From positions 62,001 through 126,000 of IMG/VR virus record IMGVR_UViG_3300042350_002797: a DNA stretch of 64,000 nt. One strand, written 5' to 3'. Shown one piece after another: positions 23,324 to 36,227 of the stretch. Position 1 is the stretch's first letter, and every line of letters starts with the position of its first letter. The notes under the pieces were generated by a model that searched no databases, was not told the origin of the DNA, and saw only the letters and a program-made list of their open reading frames with translations. The position numbers and the translations under genes were made by a program.

Positions 23324-24199
23324 TTATTTTGCACGACTTTTAACGCCGTTTAAAGGACTACCTGCACCTTTGTCGCCGTCATCGCCGCCAGCTGGTGTGC
23401 TTACTTTTTTAAGATGCTTTACACCTGCTTTACCACCTGGAACATTTACATTACCTGCATTATCTTCTTTAGTCGAAGGATTAGCAAGGCCTCCTTTGGT
23501 GCCACCGGATGTGCTTTCGCCGCCACCAAGGATATTTGCTGTAGTTCCACCCATATCGTTCTTACCTGCTACGATACTTTTTGTGTTTACACCGTCGTCG
23601 CCCATTTTTCCATACTTGGTATAATCAGCGCCGCCAACTTTTTCTACATATTCACGCATAAAACTTACGTCATCTGCCATGGACATTTTCATGTCTTTTC
23701 CCATATCGTCACCGCCCATGTCCATATCATCATCACCCATGTCCATGTCGTCGCCCATGTCGTCGTCACCCATGCCGCCTAGTTCTTTTTCAAACTGCGC
23801 ACGTAACTCGTCCATTGCATCTTCTAAATCCATTACACGATCTTCTAGATCATCCGATCCTTCTTCGTCGCCCATGTCCATATCGTCTCCTTCTTCGGAA
23901 TCGATATCACCGATCATGTCGTCAGTTGGGTCGCCGCCGATAGCATCAGAATCGTCGTCGCCTTCACCGAAAGCAAAATCTTCTTCGACTTCTTCGTCAT
24001 CATCGTGCATGGCTTCTTCTACTTCTTCATCGTCTTCTTCTTTTTCTTCTTCTACTTCGTCAAATTCTTCCGCTAGGATAGTTTCGTAGATTTCGCGGGA
24101 TTTTTCTACTACGATTTGGTGAAAAATTTCTTTAGCTGCTTCTTGGTCTTCGTTAACAAGATGCTCGAGCATCTGCTCGAATTTTGATCGATCAGTCAT
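23324..24199 (-). CDS. Highly acidic prohead core/internal protein with a Gly/Lys-rich C-terminus
   Basis: Asp/Glu/Met-rich DDM(D)MG repeats; occupies the position of T4 gp67/gp68 between portal and protease. Confidence 0.65.
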   Translation of the reverse strand: MTDRSKFEQMLEHLVNEDQEAAKEIFHQIVVEKSREIYETILAEEFDEVEEEKEEDDEEVEEAMHDDDEEVEEDFAFGEGDDDSDAIGGDPTDDMIGDIDSEEGDDMDMGDEEGSDDLEDRVMDLEDAMDELRAQFEKELGGMGDDDMGDDMDMGDDDMDMGGDDMGKDMKMSMADDVSFMREYVEKVGGADYTKYGKMGDDGVNTKSIVAGKNDMGGTTANILGGGESTSGGTKGGLANPSTKEDNAGNVNVPGGKAGVKHLKKVSTPAGGDDGDKGAGSPLNGVKSRAK

Positions 24200-30127: not shown

Positions 30128-30345
30128 CACTGTCTAATTCTGACATCGAAACAAGAATTCAATCGCTTGAATTATATGCCAAGCAGATTAAAGAAGATAT
30201 ATTTAGAATTAGTTGGTATATGCGAGGCGGTGTAAGCAGCTATGATCTATTTCAAGTGTATAGTTCTGAAGATAGAACTATTATGAATAAAATAATCGAA
30301 GAAAATATTGAAACTACAAAGAAAGCACAGATGCCGTTGCTTTAA
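30106..30345 (+). CDS. gp51-like frame without a start codon, probably reached by a -1 frameshift from gp26 at T-TTT-TTC
   Basis: Frame open 30091-30345 (…RSSLVTLSNSDIETRIQSLELYAKQIKEDIFRISWYMRGGVSSYDLFQVYSSEDRTIMNKIIEENIETTKKAQMPLL); first ATG only at 30220; slippery heptamer at 30106-30112. Confidence 0.7.
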   Translation, partial: FFRSSLVTLSNSDIETRIQSLELYAKQIKEDIFRISWYMRGGVSSYDLFQVYSSEDRTIMNKIIEENIETTKKAQMPLL

Positions 30346-31328
30346 AGCCCTTGAGCTTGCAATGCTGCTTTCAATTCAGGATCAGTAGTATACTGACTAT
30401 ATCTTCCTTGCTCTCCGCTAGGAGCAGGTTGATCTGATTTTCGTCTAGGATCTGCAGGGGTTTGTTTTCCAGGAGCAGGTTGGCCTCCTTGGCCTTGATT
30501 AGGTTTAGCATCTGCTGGTTTACCTTTGCCCATAGCTTCATCTATAGTTTTAGAAATGCCGTCTTTTAATTTATTCCAATACTTGGCCGCTACACTTCCA
30601 GGATCATCTAAGCTCATACCTGCTACTTTATAAGCTAGTACATTTCCTATAGTTTCTCTAACATCTGGACGATTCAGATACTGTTGCACTGCAATTAAAA
30701 CAACTTCACTAGCCAGAATTCCTGCTATAGCTGCTCCGCCTGCGAATCCGCCAGTGCCTATAGTGGCTCCTAAACCTAAAGCACGAAACAACCATTTTAA
30801 TCCTACAATGCTTCTTACTATAGAAGTAATTAATCCACTGGCTGTGATCTGTACAGCTAACACACTGATCAGATTGCCCTGAGTATCAAAGTAATCTTGA
30901 TCCTTGGGTAGATTATTTGTTTCATAGTATTCATCTAATCCAGATATATTTGTCCAGTAATCGATGACCATTTCGCTATAACCAAAAATCTTTAATATCT
31001 TAAGAAATCCGCCTATACGTTTTGCTGCACTCTTCTCGCCCAATGCACGCCATGACGGGTCATTGCGATCTTTTAGATATTTTAGTAATTTCCTAACACT
31101 CTTTTTACCAACAATTTTAGTTGTTTGAGCAGTTGCTTGTCCAGGTGTCTTAGGAACTTTTTTGAATATTGCTGGACGCTTAATCATATCGTCCATAGCA
31201 GCTTTTTGCGAATTATAACTGCCTACTCTACGACCATCAGGCATTTGAACACTGAACTTTCCAGTGCTAGAATCTTTAACAACTTTAGGTCTAGTGTCAG
31301 CTTCCGCGATTATTTCAAATATATTCAT
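30342..31328 (-). CDS. Hypothetical protein (328 aa) with hydrophobic helices; candidate internal/ejection protein
   Basis: Own late promoter; N-terminal MNIFEIIAE; central hydrophobic Gly/Ala/Ile segments; low-complexity Pro/Gln tail. Confidence 0.6.
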   Translation of the reverse strand: MNIFEIIAEADTRPKVVKDSSTGKFSVQMPDGRRVGSYNSQKAAMDDMIKRPAIFKKVPKTPGQATAQTTKIVGKKSVRKLLKYLKDRNDPSWRALGEKSAAKRIGGFLKILKIFGYSEMVIDYWTNISGLDEYYETNNLPKDQDYFDTQGNLISVLAVQITASGLITSIVRSIVGLKWLFRALGLGATIGTGGFAGGAAIAGILASEVVLIAVQQYLNRPDVRETIGNVLAYKVAGMSLDDPGSVAAKYWNKLKDGISKTIDEAMGKGKPADAKPNQGQGGQPAPGKQTPADPRRKSDQPAPSGEQGRYSQYTTDPELKAALQAQGL

Positions 31329-31349: not shown

Positions 31350-31357
31350 TATTTATT
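31350..31357 (-). promoter_or_regulatory. Late promoter (AATAAATA)
   Basis: 22 nt upstream of ATG 31328, directly after the last hairpin of the structured region. Confidence 0.6.
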
Positions 31358-31795
31358 AAAGATGAACTACGTTCATCTGTTCTTCGCTTACGCTCGAACA
31401 TATTGTTTTTCTTTAAATGCGAAGCACTTAAGATATTATCTAGATTGTTCAGTCATACTTAGCCCGTTGCCGGGCTAAAAAATAACATTATCTGAGTTGC
31501 ACAATATCATTTAGCATTACAGCATTACAGAGGCGGTCGTCCGGTACCTCGAGCTGCGTCTTTATACGACGGCGGCATACAAATATATGCTAACATACTT
31601 GTATACGTGCAGGTTTTCCCTGCTCATTTCGCCTTTTTATCCTTTTCAAACAATCAAATCGCAGGTCTTAGTAGCGATCTTCATCCCGAAGGGTAGTGAT
31701 TGAGCACTCTTAACGGCAAGAGATTTCCATCCCTGTGACCCGAGGTCCAGGTATCCGGGCACACGAAATTAGCCTGTGCCAGCTGTTAACCGTTT
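31358..31795 (-). ncRNA. Candidate large structured non-coding RNA (about 440 nt), family unassigned
   Basis: ORF-free gap in a gene-dense genome with more than 10 stems, GNRA loops (GGAA, GCAA, GUAA), a C(UUCG)G loop and G-U pairs that form only on the minus strand. Confidence 0.75.
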
Positions 31796-32226
31796 AATTG
31801 TTTGCCTTTGATGTGAGAGCCATGGACACGAACACTGATCTGACCATTATAGTAGCTGTCAGATTCTAGTACTCGCCGTGTGAATTGTTCTCTTGCCTCT
31901 ATGTAACTGCACTCTGCTTTGCTTTTGCAGTAGAACAGTATCTCTCTGTGAAATTTGTCTGTGCCTAATTGTGCAACATCTTTGTTAAGTTCGTCGTTGC
32001 TGCCGTAGTATGTTTGCCAGTCCGAGTCTATTTTTGATTTAATACGTTTCTTTTTCTTTGTGCCGTTTTTTAGTTTTACTATTTTATATGTGGTTTTTGA
32101 AAATTTTGCCAGTTTTTTGCCTATATACATTCGTCCGTTAACAGTATTGGTTATACAGTATACAAATCCAATACAATCTTCAGGAAGTTCCGTTATTAGT
32201 TGACTCTGGTGGTACCACGACATCAA
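31786..32226 (-). CDS. Minimal GIY-YIG endonuclease (146 aa)
   Basis: GFVYCITN..NGRMYIGKK, YYGS, YIEAREQ (catalytic Glu) and YYNG (Asn) motifs; no NUMOD or HTH tail. Confidence 0.85.
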   Translation of the reverse strand: MMSWYHQSQLITELPEDCIGFVYCITNTVNGRMYIGKKLAKFSKTTYKIVKLKNGTKKKKRIKSKIDSDWQTYYGSNDELNKDVAQLGTDKFHREILFYCKSKAECSYIEAREQFTRRVLESDSYYNGQISVRVHGSHIKGKQLNG

Positions 32227-32479
32227 CTTGTTTAGCCTTTTTTAATTCTGCCTTGCGTCGATTTGATTCAAAGTATTTTGGCGAACTGTAACTTGGTTTA
32301 GTTGCTCTATATGCCTGTACTTCTGCCCTACGTGTTCTTGCTAAAATTCTAATTTCTGCTAAAATGTGACGAAGCCTTATGCCAGATCGATGTGTACGAC
32401 TATGCATCCAATCTTGATTTTCCTCAAAATATTTGCGGAAAAGTTGCATTAGTGCTTCGTGTGTTTGTTCTTCATCCAT
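32180..32479 (-). CDS. Small helical basic protein (Hc1/histone-H1-like family, tentative)
   Basis: SGIRLRHILAEIRILARTRRAEVQ helix resembles the G.R.R..L.E...L....R.E.Q motif of phage Hc1-like proteins. Confidence 0.5.
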   Translation of the reverse strand: MDEEQTHEALMQLFRKYFEENQDWMHSRTHRSGIRLRHILAEIRILARTRRAEVQAYRATKPSYSSPKYFESNRRKAELKKAKQVDVVVPPESTNNGTS

Positions 32480-34257
32480 TATTCTACGATATCTAAATCT
32501 GTGCTGTAGCTAGTGAATCCATTTTCTTTAATAACTTTCAAAACATTATTCACACGTCCTATTAATTCGTCCTTATGACTGATTAGGTATATATTTTTGT
32601 TACGTTCTCTGGACATTTTCTTTAGAACACTCAATGCGTTTTCTACGCCACTGGCGTCTAAACCGTTATCGATCAATTCGTCTACAAATAACAAATTAAT
32701 ATTTTGATATAAACTTTCCCAGACATCTCTAAAACTCCAGCTTAGTCCAAGAATTAATCGATTTCTTTCTCCTCTACTTAGATTGTCAAAATCTAAATCT
32801 TGACCTAGTTGAGTAATTTCTACATTTAAGTCATTTAAGAAAGTTACTTGATGAGGCAAGCCCATTTTATCAAGATAATATGTTAATCTGTTATTCAAGT
32901 ATGCAAGATTTTGATCAATAATTTTTTTACGTATAAAACTATCTTTGTTAGTTAACAGTTTGAGCAAGAATTCTTGATGATCTTTAAGAGCAGTTAACTC
33001 ATTAATGATGTTCCAATCAATTTCTTGAAGGGCAGTATTCTTTAAATCTTCAATTTGTTCTGTATACGGGTCTATTTCTTGTTGACGTTTACTTAAATTA
33101 TCTTCGTAACTGGCGAGATTATTTTGATGACGTAATGCTTCTTCTACAGTATCGTAGAATGTTACAGGTCTACCGTTAATATCACCTATCTGCTCTAATT
33201 CTTGTATCACTGAAGCGTAATTGTTAGTAACAGTTTCTAGATATGTGTGTGCTTCTTGTAGATTTTTATCAGCAATTGTTTGCATTTCTTGATGTTTATG
33301 ATCTTGTAAGTCCTGCTCACACGCCGGGCATTTAGAATCCTGTAGCTTTTCTAGTTCTTTTGTGTACTTGGTAACAGTTTTATCAGCTTGTATTATAGCA
33401 GTCTCAATGGTAGCCTTTTCTTTATTCAAGCTTTTTATTTTTGCACTTAGATCATCGTAGTTCTTTAACTTAGTATGCTGCTCTAATTCGTGAGTTATAT
33501 CCACAGCTTGTAGTTCTAAGATTTTTTCTGCTAGCTTTAAACAATCTGATTGCTGTTGAGTTAGCCATGCAGACTTTCTGGTTTCTAAACCTGTAATACT
33601 TTGTTCAATTTTTTCGTTAGATTTTTTAGCAGCTTCTATATTTGCAGTTTCTTGTTGTATTTGATCTTTAGTAGCTTTGATTTGTTCTTTTAAAGACTCT
33701 GCCTTTTCACTTAACAGTGTAATCCCTAATAGTTGTTCAATAATTTCTCGTTGATCATTGGCCCGCATACTTAGAAAAGGTTCAGTGTAGGTGTTTAACG
33801 CCACTATGTGCTTGAACATATCGTGACTCATACCTAGAAGATCATCTAAATCTTTTTGTGTCTCACGCATATCTCCTTGACTATCATCTGTTTCTTCAGA
33901 GTCTTGTTCAACATCATTAACATAGAATCTTAATATTGTAGGTTTACGTCCTCTTTCTATTCGATAATCGACACCATCTTTTTCAAAAGATAAAGTAATC
34001 AACATATTCTTGTTGTTAATCTTGTTAATAAGATTGTCTTTTTTAATATTAGTTAAGGCATTGCCAAATAGTGCATAACTTAATGCATTAACGATAGTGG
34101 TTTTTCCTGTACCGTTACGAGATCCGCTATCATCTCCGCCCATGTCCAAGTTTTCACCTAGCACTAACGTTAGGTATTCTTTTTCAAAGTCTACGGCCTG
34201 GGTTTGATTGCCCACGCTCATGAAATTCTTCACAGTTAAATTTTTAATTCGGATCAT
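32479..34257 (-). CDS. gp46: Recombination ATPase (T4 gp46, SbcC/Rad50-like)
   Basis: KNFMSVGN, Walker A NGTGKTT, CPAC zinc hook, LSRGE signature, Walker B LLFVDE, ISH. Confidence 0.96.
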   Translation of the reverse strand: MIRIKNLTVKNFMSVGNQTQAVDFEKEYLTLVLGENLDMGGDDSGSRNGTGKTTIVNALSYALFGNALTNIKKDNLINKINNKNMLITLSFEKDGVDYRIERGRKPTILRFYVNDVEQDSEETDDSQGDMRETQKDLDDLLGMSHDMFKHIVALNTYTEPFLSMRANDQREIIEQLLGITLLSEKAESLKEQIKATKDQIQQETANIEAAKKSNEKIEQSITGLETRKSAWLTQQQSDCLKLAEKILELQAVDITHELEQHTKLKNYDDLSAKIKSLNKEKATIETAIIQADKTVTKYTKELEKLQDSKCPACEQDLQDHKHQEMQTIADKNLQEAHTYLETVTNNYASVIQELEQIGDINGRPVTFYDTVEEALRHQNNLASYEDNLSKRQQEIDPYTEQIEDLKNTALQEIDWNIINELTALKDHQEFLLKLLTNKDSFIRKKIIDQNLAYLNNRLTYYLDKMGLPHQVTFLNDLNVEITQLGQDLDFDNLSRGERNRLILGLSWSFRDVWESLYQNINLLFVDELIDNGLDASGVENALSVLKKMSRERNKNIYLISHKDELIGRVNNVLKVIKENGFTSYSTDLDIVE

Positions 34258-35264
34258 AAGTTATTATAAATTGAAAGCAGTATTTTACTATCATATGTTT
34301 CACTGTCAATATTAATTAATTGACTAGTTACTATTTGATCTACACTTTCAAATGATTGTATATCGATACTATTGCTTATTTCTATTTCTTTCTTTTCAGG
34401 AATCAAAGTCAATTCTCTAATATCGTAATCGCCCATAAACTTTTCTTTAATAAAACTAGCTTCTTCATAACTGATATCTATGTCCAGACTTACTCTAAGA
34501 TGTGCTTTGGGCAGTATGATTTCGTCTGCACGATCTATTAATTCACTTAGTTTAGTTGTTCTAAATGTAGGTTGGTCAGGCCAAGTGTGATATACTGGCT
34601 GATTACCCCATTCTAATATCATCATTCCCCGATCACTATCCCAATTGTCGGCATAGTTATGTGGAAATGCATTGCCAATATAAATCATATTTTTTTGTTG
34701 CTGGCGTTTATGAAAATGACCACTGAATCCTAACTCGTAATTTTGAAAATCTTGTAGTTGAATCTCTCCATGATCAGGCATTTGTATCATGGCATTCATA
34801 AAAAATGTGGGTAATTCGAAGTGACCAAAGATATAACGCCCGCCTTTTTTACTAATACTACGCCACTCGTCGCCAATTAGCCAAGGACATAAAGTCACTT
34901 CATCTATAGTCGTAGGCTGATGTATAACTGTAACACCTGGAATGTATTTTCCAAACTCTACACTATGGATATCCCGTTTATCTTTGTAATACAGATCGTG
35001 ATTACCAGGGAAAAAATAAAATTGATCAAAAGCTTTGCCCAATTTTTCAAGGGCTCTAAGGCTATAATCCATTGTAGTGATATTAAGGCTGTTGCGATTG
35101 TGATGCCAGTCGCCGAGAAAAATTCCAGTATCACACCCTTCCTCCTTTGCTTTAGCAATATACCAGTCTACAAAATCTTCGCAATCTTTATTATGTGTTT
35201 GACTATTGCTTTTTAAGCCAAAGTGTATGTCAGTAAAACATGCAGCTTTTTTAAATAGCCCCAT
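34254..35264 (-). CDS. gp47: Recombination nuclease (T4 gp47, SbcD/Mre11-like)
   Basis: Metallophosphoesterase motifs DIHFG, LGD, GNHD, GHFE and SGHFH. Confidence 0.96.
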   Translation of the reverse strand: MGLFKKAACFTDIHFGLKSNSQTHNKDCEDFVDWYIAKAKEEGCDTGIFLGDWHHNRNSLNITTMDYSLRALEKLGKAFDQFYFFPGNHDLYYKDKRDIHSVEFGKYIPGVTVIHQPTTIDEVTLCPWLIGDEWRSISKKGGRYIFGHFELPTFFMNAMIQMPDHGEIQLQDFQNYELGFSGHFHKRQQQKNMIYIGNAFPHNYADNWDSDRGMMILEWGNQPVYHTWPDQPTFRTTKLSELIDRADEIILPKAHLRVSLDIDISYEEASFIKEKFMGDYDIRELTLIPEKKEIEISNSIDIQSFESVDQIVTSQLINIDSETYDSKILLSIYNNL

Positions 35265-35409
35265 AAAATCCTTGTCCTATAACTTTTTGAACGTCTTGCA
35301 TCATTTCATCGGACATATGACAAGTCCATGCATCGCTTTCATGCACTCTTATGAATAAAAGTTTTAAACACATACCTTCAGGTAAGGTTAAGGTGATATA
35401 TTTTGTCAT
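35251..35409 (-). CDS. Unannotated 52-aa ORF between gp55 and gp47
   Basis: MTKYITLTLPEGMCLKLLFIRVHESDAWTCHMSDEMMQDVQKVIGQGFYGAI; ATGA overlap with the gp55 stop; 3' end overlaps the gp47 start. Confidence 0.6.
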   Translation of the reverse strand: MTKYITLTLPEGMCLKLLFIRVHESDAWTCHMSDEMMQDVQKVIGQGFYGAI

Positions 35410-36227
35410 TCTTCTCCGCCTTCGTGCCTGCGTACTGCGGCTTCATGTTCTCCTTGTCCGGTTCTACTATAACTAGGATTCATTCCGTTCATTTCTAGTA
35501 AGTCATCTCTAATAACTTGATTACGTTTTTCGATGTTAATGATTCTAACAAAACTATTAGTAACAGCAGCAGTAAAATAAGCAAATGGATTATTTGATTT
35601 TGATTCATCGAATTGTAAACCTATCTGAGTTAGTTGTAAAATAGCCTGTCCTCTCATTTCATCATTATAAGTATAGCCTCTTACGTTGCCCCTAGTAGCA
35701 TATCTTTCGCATAATTTAATATACATTCTAGCTAGAGTATTGGTAATTTGTCCATGATCTTTTGAAAACTTTCCTTTTTCTATGCTGCCTTTCCAGTGAC
35801 TTTTTCCTACACATACAAGTATGTCAGAGTCATCGAATTTCCAATGCTGAAAAGGCGGAAAATTAACTTTGTCGCGGCCATCTGCTACTGTTTTTGGATT
35901 CTTTTTTCTAGTAGTGTTTGTAGGAATATGATCAAATGTCATAATTCTAAAAACAAGATCTTGTTTAGGAATTTTTTTATAATCGACTTCACACTCGGCT
36001 TGCTTTATTTTCTCGCCAGCCGCCCGTCGCCGTTCGTATTCCTTAGAACCTAATCTTTTAGCTCGATTTCTCTTAGCTTCTGCTATGGTTCGTATGTTGA
36101 TTTTATCAACATGAGGTAAAATTATGTCATATTGATGATACTCTGGTTTAATGAACGAGCAATATGTATTTTTTGATTTGTGTATTTCGTCCAATAGGTC
36201 TTTGTTATTAAGATAGTTTACTTTCAT
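35406..36227 (-). CDS. gp55: Late-transcription sigma factor (T4 gp55-like)
   Basis: YLNNKDLL, N.RGYTY.DEM...AI......FD..KS.NPFAYFT....NSF.RII..EK motifs. Confidence 0.93.
   Translation of the reverse strand: MKVNYLNNKDLLDEIHKSKNTYCSFIKPEYHQYDIILPHVDKINIRTIAEAKRNRAKRLGSKEYERRRAAGEKIKQAECEVDYKKIPKQDLVFRIMTFDHIPTNTTRKKNPKTVADGRDKVNFPPFQHWKFDDSDILVCVGKSHWKGSIEKGKFSKDHGQITNTLARMYIKLCERYATRGNVRGYTYNDEMRGQAILQLTQIGLQFDESKSNNPFAYFTAAVTNSFVRIINIEKRNQVIRDDLLEMNGMNPSYSRTGQGEHEAAVRRHEGGEE

What the first reader, a model, noticed from the sequence alone, without database searches (positions are those of the whole stretch)
31358..31795. About 440-nt multi-domain structured RNA in a phage operon
This is the only long ORF-free gap in the window. 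On the minus strand it folds into a series of stems: GGCACA/UGUGCC; CCUG-GACC/GGUC-CAGG; GGGAU-GGAA-AUCUC; CUCUU/AAGAG, whose loop CCGUU can pair with the upstream AACGG (possible pseudoknot); an AAUCA/UGAUU junction enclosing CC-UUCG-GG and AUCGC/GCGAU; GCAGG/CCUGC; a 10-bp stem at 31606-31575; GAGG-CGG-ACGA-CCG-CCUC; UUAGCCCG-GCAA-CGGGCUAA; and terminal hairpins. GNRA and UUCG loops and G-U pairs favour a minus-strand RNA. It does not match tRNA, tmRNA or RNase P signatures that I can recognise. Its size is in the range of large phage ncRNAs such as ROOL and GOLLD, but I cannot assign it.
Basis: partly seen in the sequence, partly recalled or inferred. Interest (0 to 1): 0.85.

Follow-up and report, generated by a model that had tools for sequence, protein, structure and literature searches.

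The report
Long form of Polynucleobacter-1 RNA
The gap holds a real, roughly 435-base folded RNA gene with three pseudoknots; its first third is a known orphan Rfam motif (Polynucleobacter-1), the rest has not been described, and its function is still unknown.

Summary
Window 31358-31795 (minus strand) is non-coding and folds far better than shuffled sequence. It is conserved over its whole length in 117 uncultured T4-like phage contigs.

It is not unassignable. The 5' 137 nt (31648-31784) match Rfam RF01718, Polynucleobacter-1 RNA, at 112 bits. That family is a 141-nt orphan motif from 2010 with no known function. The other ~300 nt are not in Rfam.

The RNA starts at the stop codon of a SegE-type GIY-YIG gene in 106 of 108 loci. 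It ends in two hairpins just before a T4-type late promoter.

The pairing with the nuclease is not obligatory. The GIY-YIG family occurs in 497 cultured-phage records that lack the RNA. A related RNA sits in Burkholderiales genomic islands beside a DUF6641 gene, with no GIY-YIG.

Two 14-nt loop modules, 52 nt apart, change in lock-step across lineages. No complementary partner for them was found inside the RNA.

Best reading: a stand-alone, trans-acting large ncRNA of mobile elements. Its mechanism is inferred, not shown.

The parts
31358..31794 (-). Whole conserved RNA element (RNA position 1 = window 31800): from the 5' strand of pseudoknot Pk1 to the end of terminal hairpin T2 plus its short U run.
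   Evidence: nhmmer aligns 117 loci over essentially the whole length. Fold z = -4.98. Covariation is given.
31648..31784 (-). 5' domain, which equals Rfam RF01718 Polynucleobacter-1 (P1, P2, the junction CACAGGGAUGGAAA, P3, and P4 with P4a/P4b).
   Evidence: cmscan 112.1 bits, E = 1.7e-23, model positions 1-141 of 141.
31790..31794 (-). Pk1 5' strand (AACGG). It pairs with the P3 loop CCGUU at 31712-31716. It lies outside the Rfam model and overlaps the last codons and stop of the GIY-YIG ORF.
   Evidence: Pair 8-88: GC 34, AU 22, UA 1, GU 1. L082 and the bacterial type carry other complementary variants.
31609..31623 (-). P5 hairpin (GCAG/CUGC).
   Evidence: All 4 pairs show double changes (helix 9).
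31575..31606 (-). P6, a 13-bp hairpin whose loop UUAGCA (31588-31593) forms pseudoknot Pk2.
   Evidence: 11 of 13 pairs show double changes (helices 10-11).
31511..31516 (-). Pk2 3' strand (UGCUAA), pairing with the P6 loop.
   Evidence: All 6 pairs show double changes and 97% of cells are paired (helix 12). At least six different complementary sequence pairs are seen across lineages.
31566..31570 (-). Pk3 5' strand (GUCGU), pairing with ACGAC at 31536-31540 inside the P9 loop.
   Evidence: Pair 233-263: UA 30, CG 28. Pair 234-262: GC 32, AU 18, GU 6 (helices 13-14).
31519..31557 (-). P8 (GCAGC/GCUGU) enclosing P9 (GAGGU/GCCUC) and the conserved GGUACCGG...ACCGCC.
   Evidence: helices 15-17. 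Pair 245-281: CG 24, GC 24, UA 6.
31486..31499 (-). Twin module A (CAACUCAGAUAAUG).
   Evidence: In 42 of 42 sequences it matches module B at the variable dinucleotide (AG, GG, GC or AC) and at the pentamer (AUAAU, AUGAU or AUGAA).
31459..31478 (-). Hairpin H (UUAGCCCG-GCAA-CGGGCUAA), lying between the twin modules.
   Evidence: helix 18. A hairpin in the same position is present in the bacterial type.
31434..31447 (-). Twin module B (CAAUCUAGAUAAUA).
   Evidence: No complementary partner for it was found within the RNA.
31379..31399 (-). Terminal hairpin T1 (GUUC...GAAC with an inner GC-GUAA-GC).
   Evidence: helices 19-20; all pairs show double changes.
31358..31377 (-). Terminal hairpin T2 (GAUGAAC-GUA-GUUCAUC) plus UUU. 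It looks like an intrinsic terminator.
   Evidence: Perfect hairpins with compensatory variants (AACGAGC/GCUCGUU, AGUGAAC/GUUCACU and others) are visible in the alignments. The simple terminator scan did not call it in the window.
31350..31357 (-). AATAAATA, a T4-type late-promoter-like motif lying between T2 and the next gene. It bounds the element and is not part of the RNA.
   Evidence: A (T/A/C)ATAAATA-like motif is present in 51 of 59 homologues. The T4 late-promoter consensus TATAAATA is taken from general knowledge.
31786..32226 (-). Upstream SegE-type GIY-YIG nuclease gene (146 aa). It is the RNA's neighbour and is not shown to be a functional partner.
   Evidence: Pfam PF19835, E = 5.8e-34. 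The ORF ends at the RNA start in 106 of 108 loci.

Best explanation
The gap encodes a genuine, independently folding non-coding RNA of about 435 nt. It is a long form of the Polynucleobacter-1 RNA.

Shown:
- It has a 5' domain identical in architecture to Rfam RF01718.
- It has about 300 further conserved nucleotides: P5, P6, P8/P9, hairpin H and two terminal hairpins.
- Three pseudoknots tie it together: Pk1, Pk2 and Pk3.

Inferred:
- In this T4-like phage it is transcribed on the minus strand as the last element of the gp55-gp47-gp46-orf99-GIY-YIG operon.
- It starts at the nuclease gene's stop codon and ends at hairpins T1/T2, just before the late promoter of the next gene.
- It acts in trans as a stand-alone RNA of mobile elements. 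It is neither a leader of a neighbouring gene nor an obligate cofactor of the adjacent nuclease.

Most likely mechanism, at low confidence: it works as a protein-binding scaffold or decoy. Its two co-evolving 14-nt modules would present the same lineage-specific sequence to a dimeric or two-site external partner.
For: Rfam match at 112 bits.

Whole-length conservation in 117 viral loci.

Covariation:
- 91.2% of cells paired against 79.4% in shuffles.
- 65 of 94 pairs show double changes.
- Covariation score 0.363, against 0.156 for shuffles (0 of 500 reach it) and 0.05-0.08 for slid structures.

A model of the middle domain finds loci that were held out of it: L149 at 109 bits, and the divergent L007 clade at E about 1e-3.

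G-U cells far outnumber A-C cells, and all 117 copies lie on the strand of the upstream operon.

Independence from its neighbours:
- The GIY-YIG family is present in 497 cultured-phage records, none of which has the RNA. In Melnitz and ACP17 there is no long gap after the gene.
- Nine bacterial or metagenomic loci and two Burkholderiales MAGs carry the RNA (82-98 bits) with no GIY-YIG. There it lies divergent from a DUF6641 gene.
- Five of 70 phage loci have no same-strand gene after the RNA.
- A late-promoter motif lies 3' of the RNA, so late transcripts would exclude it.

Twin modules: they are identical in 42 of 42 sequences at the variable positions, 9.6 of 10 positions against 8.0 for shuffled partners. 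No complementary partner was found within the RNA.
Against: There is no expression data. No isolate carries the RNA, so the transcript ends are inferred.

No sigma-70-like promoter was found directly upstream, in the phage or in the bacterial loci.

The trans-acting scaffold or decoy mechanism rests only on excluding other readings and on the twin modules. No partner was identified.

Models built from the phage type did not detect the middle or 3' parts of the bacterial RNAs. Homology beyond the 5' domain between the two types therefore rests on a shared architecture pattern that I derived after looking at both.

The near-universal abutment to a nuclease gene is left as unexplained synteny. 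In L149 a PD-(D/E)XK nuclease takes the place of the GIY-YIG.
Confidence: 0.55

Rival explanations
1. The RNA is the cofactor of the adjacent nuclease, as a guide or scaffold. The precedent is HEARO RNA, described in the same 2010 survey and later recognised as the omega RNA of IscB (general knowledge). The twin modules would act as the specificity elements.
For: The RNA starts at the stop codon of a nuclease gene in 107 of 108 loci. In L149 a PDDEXK_15 nuclease replaces the GIY-YIG at exactly the same place. The GIY-YIG protein is only 142-146 aa and has no DNA-binding domain. The twin modules co-evolve and have no partner within the RNA.
Against: The GIY-YIG family is in 497 cultured-phage records that have no such RNA. 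The bacterial RNAs have no GIY-YIG within the fetched flanks. In L082 two unrelated genes separate the nuclease from the RNA. No enrichment of sequences matching or complementary to the modules was found in the 64-kb window.
Confidence: 0.1
2. The RNA is a cis-acting 3' element of the early/middle operon. It would protect the upstream mRNA from 3' exonucleases and insulate the late gene downstream by terminating read-through. It would have no role of its own in trans.
For: Its position at the end of the operon. Two terminal hairpins sit directly before a late-promoter motif. No promoter of its own was found. A fast-evolving gene family (N-terminus MRINELL..., Gly-rich) follows in most loci.
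Against: A terminator or stabiliser does not need 435 nt, three pseudoknots and a long sequence core shared between phage and bacterial copies. In bacteria the RNA is divergent from its neighbour, not at the 3' end of an operon. It persists where no gene follows it.
Confidence: 0.15
3. The RNA is a ribozyme. For example, it might cut itself free of the GIY-YIG mRNA at the stop-codon boundary, or it might catalyse some other reaction.
For: A long junction sequence, CACAGGGAUGGAAA, is shared by phage and bacterial copies, though my search pattern required it. The fold is multi-pseudoknotted. The 5' edge coincides exactly with the end of an ORF.
Against: There is no match to any ribozyme family in Rfam, even at E <= 10. 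No conserved cleavage-site signature was identified. This reading cannot be tested with these tools.
Confidence: 0.08
4. The conserved element works at the DNA or single-stranded DNA level. It could be a replication or transfer origin, or the homing site of the neighbouring nuclease genes, and the folds would be incidental.
For: The bacterial copies lie in integrative islands beside DUF6876 and a DUF6641 protein. The only named look-alike of DUF6641 is the oriT-adjacent MobI, at a weak score of 0.51. Swapping of nuclease genes at one site is typical of free-standing homing endonucleases, which target conserved DNA.
Against: Compensatory changes preserve pairing, not sequence, in more than 60 pairs. 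G-U cells far outnumber A-C cells, so one strand is read. The orientation always matches the flanking transcription. The homing idea would explain the neighbourhood but not the structure.
Confidence: 0.05

Closest known systems
Rfam RF01718, Polynucleobacter-1 RNA motif (Weinberg et al. 2010, PMC2864571)
   Same: The 5' 137 nt match the whole 141-position model at 112 bits. The stems P1-P4 and the junction are the same. The gene context is the same as described in 2010: downstream of the GOS11034 / P-SSM2 gene 218-like family, which here is the SegE-type GIY-YIG gene. The setting is also the same: freshwater samples and Burkholderiales.
   Different: The Rfam model stops after P4. Here about 300 further nucleotides are conserved and covary, and a pseudoknot strand (Pk1) lies 5' of the model. 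The 2010 paper found no example in a purified phage; here 117 T4-like viral contigs carry it. No function has been published.
Large ncRNAs associated with phages and mobile elements: ROOL and GOLLD
   Same: They are of similar size (over 400 nt), have many helices and pseudoknots, are carried by phages or prophages, and have unknown biochemical function. This comparison rests on general knowledge.
   Different: There is no sequence or structure match in Rfam, at the gathering threshold or at E <= 10. Multimer formation, reported for those RNAs, was not tested here.
HEARO / omega RNA of IscB (a structured RNA next to a nuclease gene)
   Same: It is a large structured RNA lying directly beside a small nuclease gene on a mobile element, and it was first found in the same 2010 survey.
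   Different: The linkage is not obligatory in either direction. No terminal variable guide segment was identified. The nuclease is of the GIY-YIG type, not HNH/RuvC.
T4 td group I intron with the GIY-YIG homing endonuclease I-TevI
   Same: A GIY-YIG gene lies next to a pseudoknotted RNA of several hundred nucleotides in a T4-like phage.
   Different: There is no match to the group I intron model, even at E <= 10. No split host gene is present: the flanking ORFs are complete and unrelated. The nuclease ORF lies 5' of the RNA, not inside one of its loops.

Membership tests
Rfam RF01718 Polynucleobacter-1 RNA | The covariance-model score reaches the curated gathering score of 37 bits over the full model. 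| tested here: met
   112.1 bits, model positions 1-141 of 141, window 31648-31784 on the minus strand.
Rfam RF01718 Polynucleobacter-1 RNA | The consensus helices (P1, P2, P3, P4 with two inner hairpins) are kept by compensatory changes. | tested here: met
   Helices 2-8 have 89-100% of cells paired. 19 of their 31 pairs show double changes.
Rfam RF01718 Polynucleobacter-1 RNA | The gene context described by its authors: downstream of the GOS11034 / P-SSM2 gene 218-like gene. | tested here: met
   A SegE-type GIY-YIG ORF ends at the RNA start in 106 of 108 loci. The family is abundant in cyanophages. That P-SSM2 gene 218 is itself this GIY-YIG family is inferred, not checked directly.
Rfam RF01718 Polynucleobacter-1 RNA | The family as defined is a 141-nt motif. 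| tested here: not met
   The conserved, covarying unit is about 435 nt in phages and at least 470 nt in bacteria. The Rfam model covers only its 5' third.
Group I intron | A match to the intron core model and an interrupted host gene. | tested here: not met
   No RF00028 hit at E <= 10. The flanking ORFs are complete and unrelated.
ROOL, GOLLD and other curated large ncRNAs | A match to the family's covariance model. | tested here: not met
   Only RF01718 passes in the 64-kb window. Sub-threshold hits are weak and unrelated: cow-rumen-2 at 23 bits against 66, RAGATH-33 and sR17.
Nuclease guide or cofactor RNA (omega RNA-like) | Obligatory co-occurrence of the RNA and its nuclease. | tested here: not met
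   The nuclease occurs without the RNA in 497 cultured-phage records. The RNA occurs without the nuclease in bacterial loci.
Nuclease guide or cofactor RNA (omega RNA-like) | Physical binding to the nuclease, and dependence of its activity on the RNA. | not testable with these tools
   This needs biochemistry.
Cis-regulatory 5' leader or riboswitch | A conserved downstream gene in the same transcript. | tested here: not met
   A late-promoter motif lies between the RNA and the next gene. Five of 70 loci have no same-strand gene downstream. In bacteria the downstream genes vary.
tRNA / tmRNA | Detection by ARAGORN. | tested here: not met
   0 genes were found in the window.
Intrinsic terminator (hairpin T2 only) | A G+C-rich hairpin followed by a run of U. 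| tested here: inconclusive
   The hairpin is kept by compensatory changes. The window's U run is only 3 nt, and the scan did not call a terminator there. Many homologues have UUUUU.

The most novel reading that the evidence does not exclude
The long Polynucleobacter-1 RNA is a new class of large RNA of mobile elements. Its two co-evolving 14-nt loop modules would be programmable specificity elements. They might read a nucleic-acid target that differs between lineages, in the manner of a guide, or they might drive assembly of an RNA-only or RNA-protein multimer. The RNA would be shared between T4-like phages of Burkholderiales and small islands in their hosts, for example in a conflict between a phage and a satellite or defence element.
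Probability: 0.15. Interest if true: 0.85.

Novelty: new variant of a known kind. Interest (0 to 1): 0.6.

Why it matters
Few bacterial or phage non-coding RNAs longer than 400 nt with complex tertiary folds are known, and several of them turned out to be ribozymes, guide RNAs or self-assembling cages.

This work makes four concrete advances:
- A 16-year-old orphan Rfam motif turns out to be only the 5' third of a much larger RNA with three pseudoknots.
- The RNA is placed for the first time in identifiable phage genomes: a clade of uncultured freshwater T4-like phages.
- A related form is shown to live in Burkholderiales genomic islands, without the nuclease gene.
- Two sequence modules are shown to evolve in concert. 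This gives a concrete handle for finding the RNA's partner.

The RNA is well suited to structure determination and to metatranscriptome checks.

Tried and rejected
- Other Rfam families, at the gathering threshold and at E <= 10: only RF01718 is credible.
- tRNA and tmRNA: none found.
- Cultured phages by blastn: the RNA gave no hit in 50,697 records.
- Group I intron: no model hit and no split gene.
- Leader of the downstream gene: rejected because a late-promoter motif lies after the RNA and five loci have no gene there. I first thought the downstream gene was not conserved. That was wrong: 44 of 54 distinct downstream ORFs form one fast-evolving family.
- RNA-guided GIY-YIG nuclease: rejected as an obligate system.
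- Extending phage-derived covariance models to the bacterial RNAs: both failed. The one hit in L198 lies outside the RNA and is taken as chance.
- A complement of the twin modules within the RNA, or an excess of module-like sequences in the window: none found.
- A consistent local fold around the twin modules: single-sequence folds disagree, so their pairing state is left open.
- An antisense ORF: the stop-free stretches on the plus strand vary in frame and extent and are attributed to base composition.
- Exact look-up of the two DUF6641 proteins: nothing on record.
- A bacterial-type pattern searched in viral contigs: no hits.

Full report
**What is in the window.** The window is part of a T4-like phage genome. 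On the minus strand lie gp55-like (35406-36227), gp47/SbcD-like (34254-35264), gp46/SbcC-like (32479-34257), a 99-aa ORF (32180-32479) and a 146-aa SegE-type GIY-YIG nuclease (31786-32226; Pfam PF19835, E = 5.8e-34). Then comes the gap, then a 328-aa ORF (30342-31328). A baseplate-hub gene follows on the plus strand, and a tape-measure-like gene after it. The gap has no ORF of note on the RNA strand. As RNA, its minus strand folds at -142.9 kcal/mol against -113.1 +/- 6.0 for shuffles (z = -4.98).

**A known family covers the 5' third.** cmscan against Rfam 15 finds one family in the whole 64-kb window: RF01718, Polynucleobacter-1 RNA, at 31648-31784 on the minus strand. It scores 112.1 bits (gathering score 37) and spans all 141 model positions. 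A permissive scan of the region adds nothing credible. ARAGORN finds no tRNA or tmRNA.

The only paper in the library that mentions this family is its description by Weinberg et al. 2010. Its supplement says the motif occurs in environmental samples and in Polynucleobacter. It lies mostly downstream of genes of family GOS11034, which may be related to P-SSM2 gene 218, and it was not found in any purified phage. No function is given.

**The conserved element is three times longer than the Rfam model.** Two pattern scans of IMG/VR gave 117 loci. These align to the window's RNA over essentially its whole length, about positions 3-505 of a profile built from the first set. Because I fished with the exact string CACAGGGATGGAAA, the invariance of that string in my set is an ascertainment effect.

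The synteny is constant: gp55, gp47, gp46, a small ORF, the GIY-YIG gene, the RNA, 0-5 variable ORFs, a convergent hub gene and a tape-measure gene. Blastn finds the RNA in none of 50,697 cultured-phage records.

**Structure.** Numbering sets RNA position 1 at window 31800. I analysed 59 non-redundant phage-type sequences (alignment A2). A mutual-information scan and RNAalifold led to a model of 94 pairs in 22 helices.

Formal counts:
- 91.2% of cells are paired, against 79.4% in shuffles.
- 65 pairs have changes on both sides.
- The covariation score is 0.363, against 0.156 for shuffles (0 of 500 reach it) and 0.05-0.08 for the structure slid by 1-3 columns.

Beyond the Rfam part, the supported helices are P5, P6 (13 bp), P8, P9, hairpin H and the terminal hairpins T1 and T2.

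Three pseudoknots are supported:
- Pk1: AACGG (7-11) with the P3 loop CCGUU (85-89). Its 5' strand lies outside the Rfam model, at or just after the GIY-YIG stop codon.
- Pk2: the P6 loop UUAGCA (208-213) with UGCUAA (285-290). At least six different complementary sequence pairs occur across lineages, for example CUCUAAU/AUUAGAG in the L007 clade and AUCGCAU/AUGCGAU in L141.
- Pk3: GUCGU (231-235) with ACGAC (261-265).

The helices contain 413 G-U cells against 98 A-C cells, so the minus strand is the one that folds. A covariance model of the middle domain (R1) recovers loci that were left out of it: L149 at 109 bits, and the divergent L007/L015/L087/L132 clade at E about 1e-3, all at the expected place.

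The exceptions are the proposed GGGAU-GGAA-AUCUC hairpin and the 'ACGA loop', which is in fact part of Pk3.

**Ends of the element.** In 106 of 108 loci with enough upstream sequence, the GIY-YIG ORF ends within a few bases of the RNA start. In the window the last codons overlap the Pk1 strand. At the 3' end, T1 and T2 are kept by compensatory changes. They are followed by a short U run and, in 51 of 59 sequences, by a (T/A/C)ATAAATA motif. That motif resembles the T4 late-promoter consensus TATAAATA, which I take from general knowledge.

No sigma-70-like promoter lies directly upstream on the minus strand. I therefore infer that the RNA is made as the 3' end of the early/middle operon transcript. 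I also infer that late transcripts of the next gene start after it. None of this is shown.

**Relation to its neighbours.**
- The next same-strand ORFs form one fast-evolving family in 44 of 54 distinct cases. They share an N-terminus like MRINELL and Gly-rich repeats. My first impression that the downstream gene was not conserved was wrong.
- Five of 70 loci have no same-strand gene before the convergent hub gene, and they still keep the RNA.
- In L149 the GIY-YIG gene is replaced, at the same spot, by a PDDEXK_15 endonuclease gene.
- In L082 a B12-binding radical-SAM gene and a 151-aa ORF lie between the GIY-YIG gene and the RNA.
- The GIY-YIG family itself is widespread. It occurs in 497 cultured-phage records, mostly cyanophages, as a single copy, and is often mislabelled 'NAD synthetase'.
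- Its closest cultured relatives have no long gap after the gene: Methylophilales phage Melnitz (48% identity) and Acidovorax phage ACP17.

**A bacterial form.** A scan of one genome per species found true RF01718 hits in a Limnohabitans MAG (L131, 93 bits) and in a MAG labelled Bordetella parapertussis (L128, 84 bits). It also found a phage-type copy on a 9-kb contig binned with Polynucleobacter (L123). A metagenome scan with a pattern specific to the bacterial type gave nine loci. Eight are of the bacterial type, scoring 82-96 bits, and one (L201) is of the phage type.

These bacterial copies have no GIY-YIG gene. The RNA lies divergent from a 153-aa DUF6641 gene, which is followed by a 137-aa ORF. 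Nearby are DUF6876, integrases or a resolvase and, in L128, a type III restriction-modification system. The window encodes no homologue of DUF6641 or of the 137-aa protein. DUF6641 is uncharacterised. Its only named look-alike is the oriT-adjacent MobI, at a weak score of 0.51, and no paper mentions it.

The bacterial RNAs are conserved among themselves for at least 450 nt. They probably end in hairpins of the GAAC-GNNA-GUUC type, like phage T2.

Phage-derived models of the middle and 3' domains do not detect the bacterial RNAs. Homology beyond the 5' domain is therefore not shown by that test. However, the pattern AACTC-N30-60-AGTGTG-N3-13-AATCT gives one hit on the RNA strand at the expected distance in 59 phage-type loci and in all nine bacterial loci that reach that far. 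The other 140 loci have no hit; these are mostly the chance matches of my first scan, plus RNA-bearing loci whose sequence differs from the pattern or is cut short. I derived this pattern after inspecting both types, so it is supporting evidence only.

**The twin modules.** Two 14-nt segments flank hairpin H: A (302-315, CAACUCAGAUAAUG) and B (354-367, CAAUCUAGAUAAUA). In all 42 phage-type sequences examined they carry the same variable dinucleotide (AG, GG, GC or AC) and the same pentamer (AUAAU, AUGAU or AUGAA). They usually share the same first two bases as well. These states occur in several combinations, which implies repeated concerted change: 9.6 of 10 positions are identical, against 8.0 +/- 0.13 for shuffled partners.

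The bacterial RNAs show the same behaviour with other sequences. The L131 group and L197 have AACUCAUCGAAAG and AAUCUAUCGAAAG; L128 has AACUCAGCAAAU and AAUCUUGCAAAU.

I found no column inside the RNA that covaries in a complementary way with the modules, apart from one clade-level association at position 292. The window shows no excess of module-like or complementary sequences. Single-sequence folds disagree on whether the modules are paired. This points to an external partner seen twice, or to a symmetric partner. That is an inference.

**What it most likely is.** The following is shown. This is a large, strand-specific, pseudoknotted RNA structure. It is conserved in a clade of T4-like phages, and its 5' domain is also conserved in Burkholderiales islands. 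It is the long form of an orphan Rfam motif.

The following is inferred. It is a stand-alone, trans-acting RNA of mobile elements. It is produced at the end of the early/middle operon. It probably works as a protein-binding scaffold or decoy that presents two copies of a lineage-specific sequence.

Four rival readings remain open: a cofactor of the adjacent nuclease, a cis-acting 3' element, a ribozyme, and a DNA-level element. Each is weighed in the rival-explanations section of this report. The constant neighbourhood of nuclease genes, including one swap, may simply reflect free-standing endonuclease genes settling beside a highly conserved target sequence, as happens in T4 (general knowledge). 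I could not test that.

**Novelty.** The 5' third is already known and listed in Rfam. The following are, as far as the searched literature and Rfam 15 show, not described:
- the roughly 300-nt extension;
- the three pseudoknots, one of which uses a strand outside the Rfam model;
- the twin modules;
- the assignment to T4-like phage genomes;
- the separate bacterial island context.

I rate this a new variant of a known kind and moderately interesting.

Noticed in passing
L149:4127-4642 (+): In one phage lineage the GIY-YIG gene upstream of the RNA is replaced, at the same position and with its stop abutting the RNA, by a 171-aa PDDEXK_15 endonuclease gene (Pfam E = 1.1e-25). This is a nuclease-gene swap at a fixed site.
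   Followed up: partly
L082:4678-6488 (-): A B12-binding radical-SAM gene (458 aa) and a 151-aa ORF are inserted between the GIY-YIG gene and the RNA. In this locus the RNA is 1.8 kb from the nuclease gene.
   Followed up: partly
L202:900-2463; L128:724-6137; L131:608-1570: The bacterial copies of the RNA sit in small islands. A divergent DUF6641 gene and a conserved 137-aa ORF lie beside the RNA. Nearby are DUF6876, integrases or a resolvase and, in L128, a type III restriction-modification system. What kind of island this is (satellite, mobilisable island or remnant) is unknown.
   Followed up: partly
window 30342-31328 (-) and the first ORF after the RNA in most loci: The gene after the RNA belongs to a fast-evolving family with a conserved N-terminus (M-R/K-I-x-E-L/I-I/L-x-E) and Gly-rich repeats of the GxGxAVGG type. 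It has no Pfam or PHROG match. Between the RNA and the hub gene lies a hypervariable stretch of 0-5 ORFs.
   Followed up: partly
window 32180-32226: In the window the 99-aa ORF overlaps the start of the GIY-YIG ORF by 47 nt in another frame. In other loci the shorter homologue of this ORF ends just before the GIY-YIG start.
   Followed up: no
window 23324-24199 (-): A 291-aa protein that is extremely rich in Asp and Glu, with repeated DDMG and MGDD runs, lies near the portal gene. It was not examined.
   Followed up: no
L066:185-337, L172:929-1076, L020:4863-5000, L007:774-933: Lineage-specific insertions of extra hairpins occur inside the RNA: in the P8 loop of L066 and L172, and between the Pk3 strand and P8 in L020. 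The L007/L015/L132 clade lacks hairpin P4b and has an insertion before P5.
   Followed up: no
window 31724-31757 (-): In most homologues, the strands flanking P2 (CCCUAAAC and GGGAUGGAAA) resemble the 11-nt GAAA-tetraloop receptor (CCUAAG/UAUGG, recalled from memory). Many copies have a GAAA loop on P4a. I saw no clean co-variation between the two features, so this is a lead only.
   Followed up: partly
L123 (contig JBBAKF010000080.1, 9.2 kb): A phage-type GIY-YIG-plus-RNA locus is binned in a Polynucleobacter MAG. With the bacterial copies in Limnohabitans and other Burkholderiales, this hints that the phage clade infects freshwater Burkholderiales.
   Followed up: no
window 31786-32226 (-); PHROG 447: This SegE-type GIY-YIG family is annotated 'NAD synthetase' in PHROGs and in many GenBank phage records. 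That is probably a propagated misannotation.
   Followed up: no
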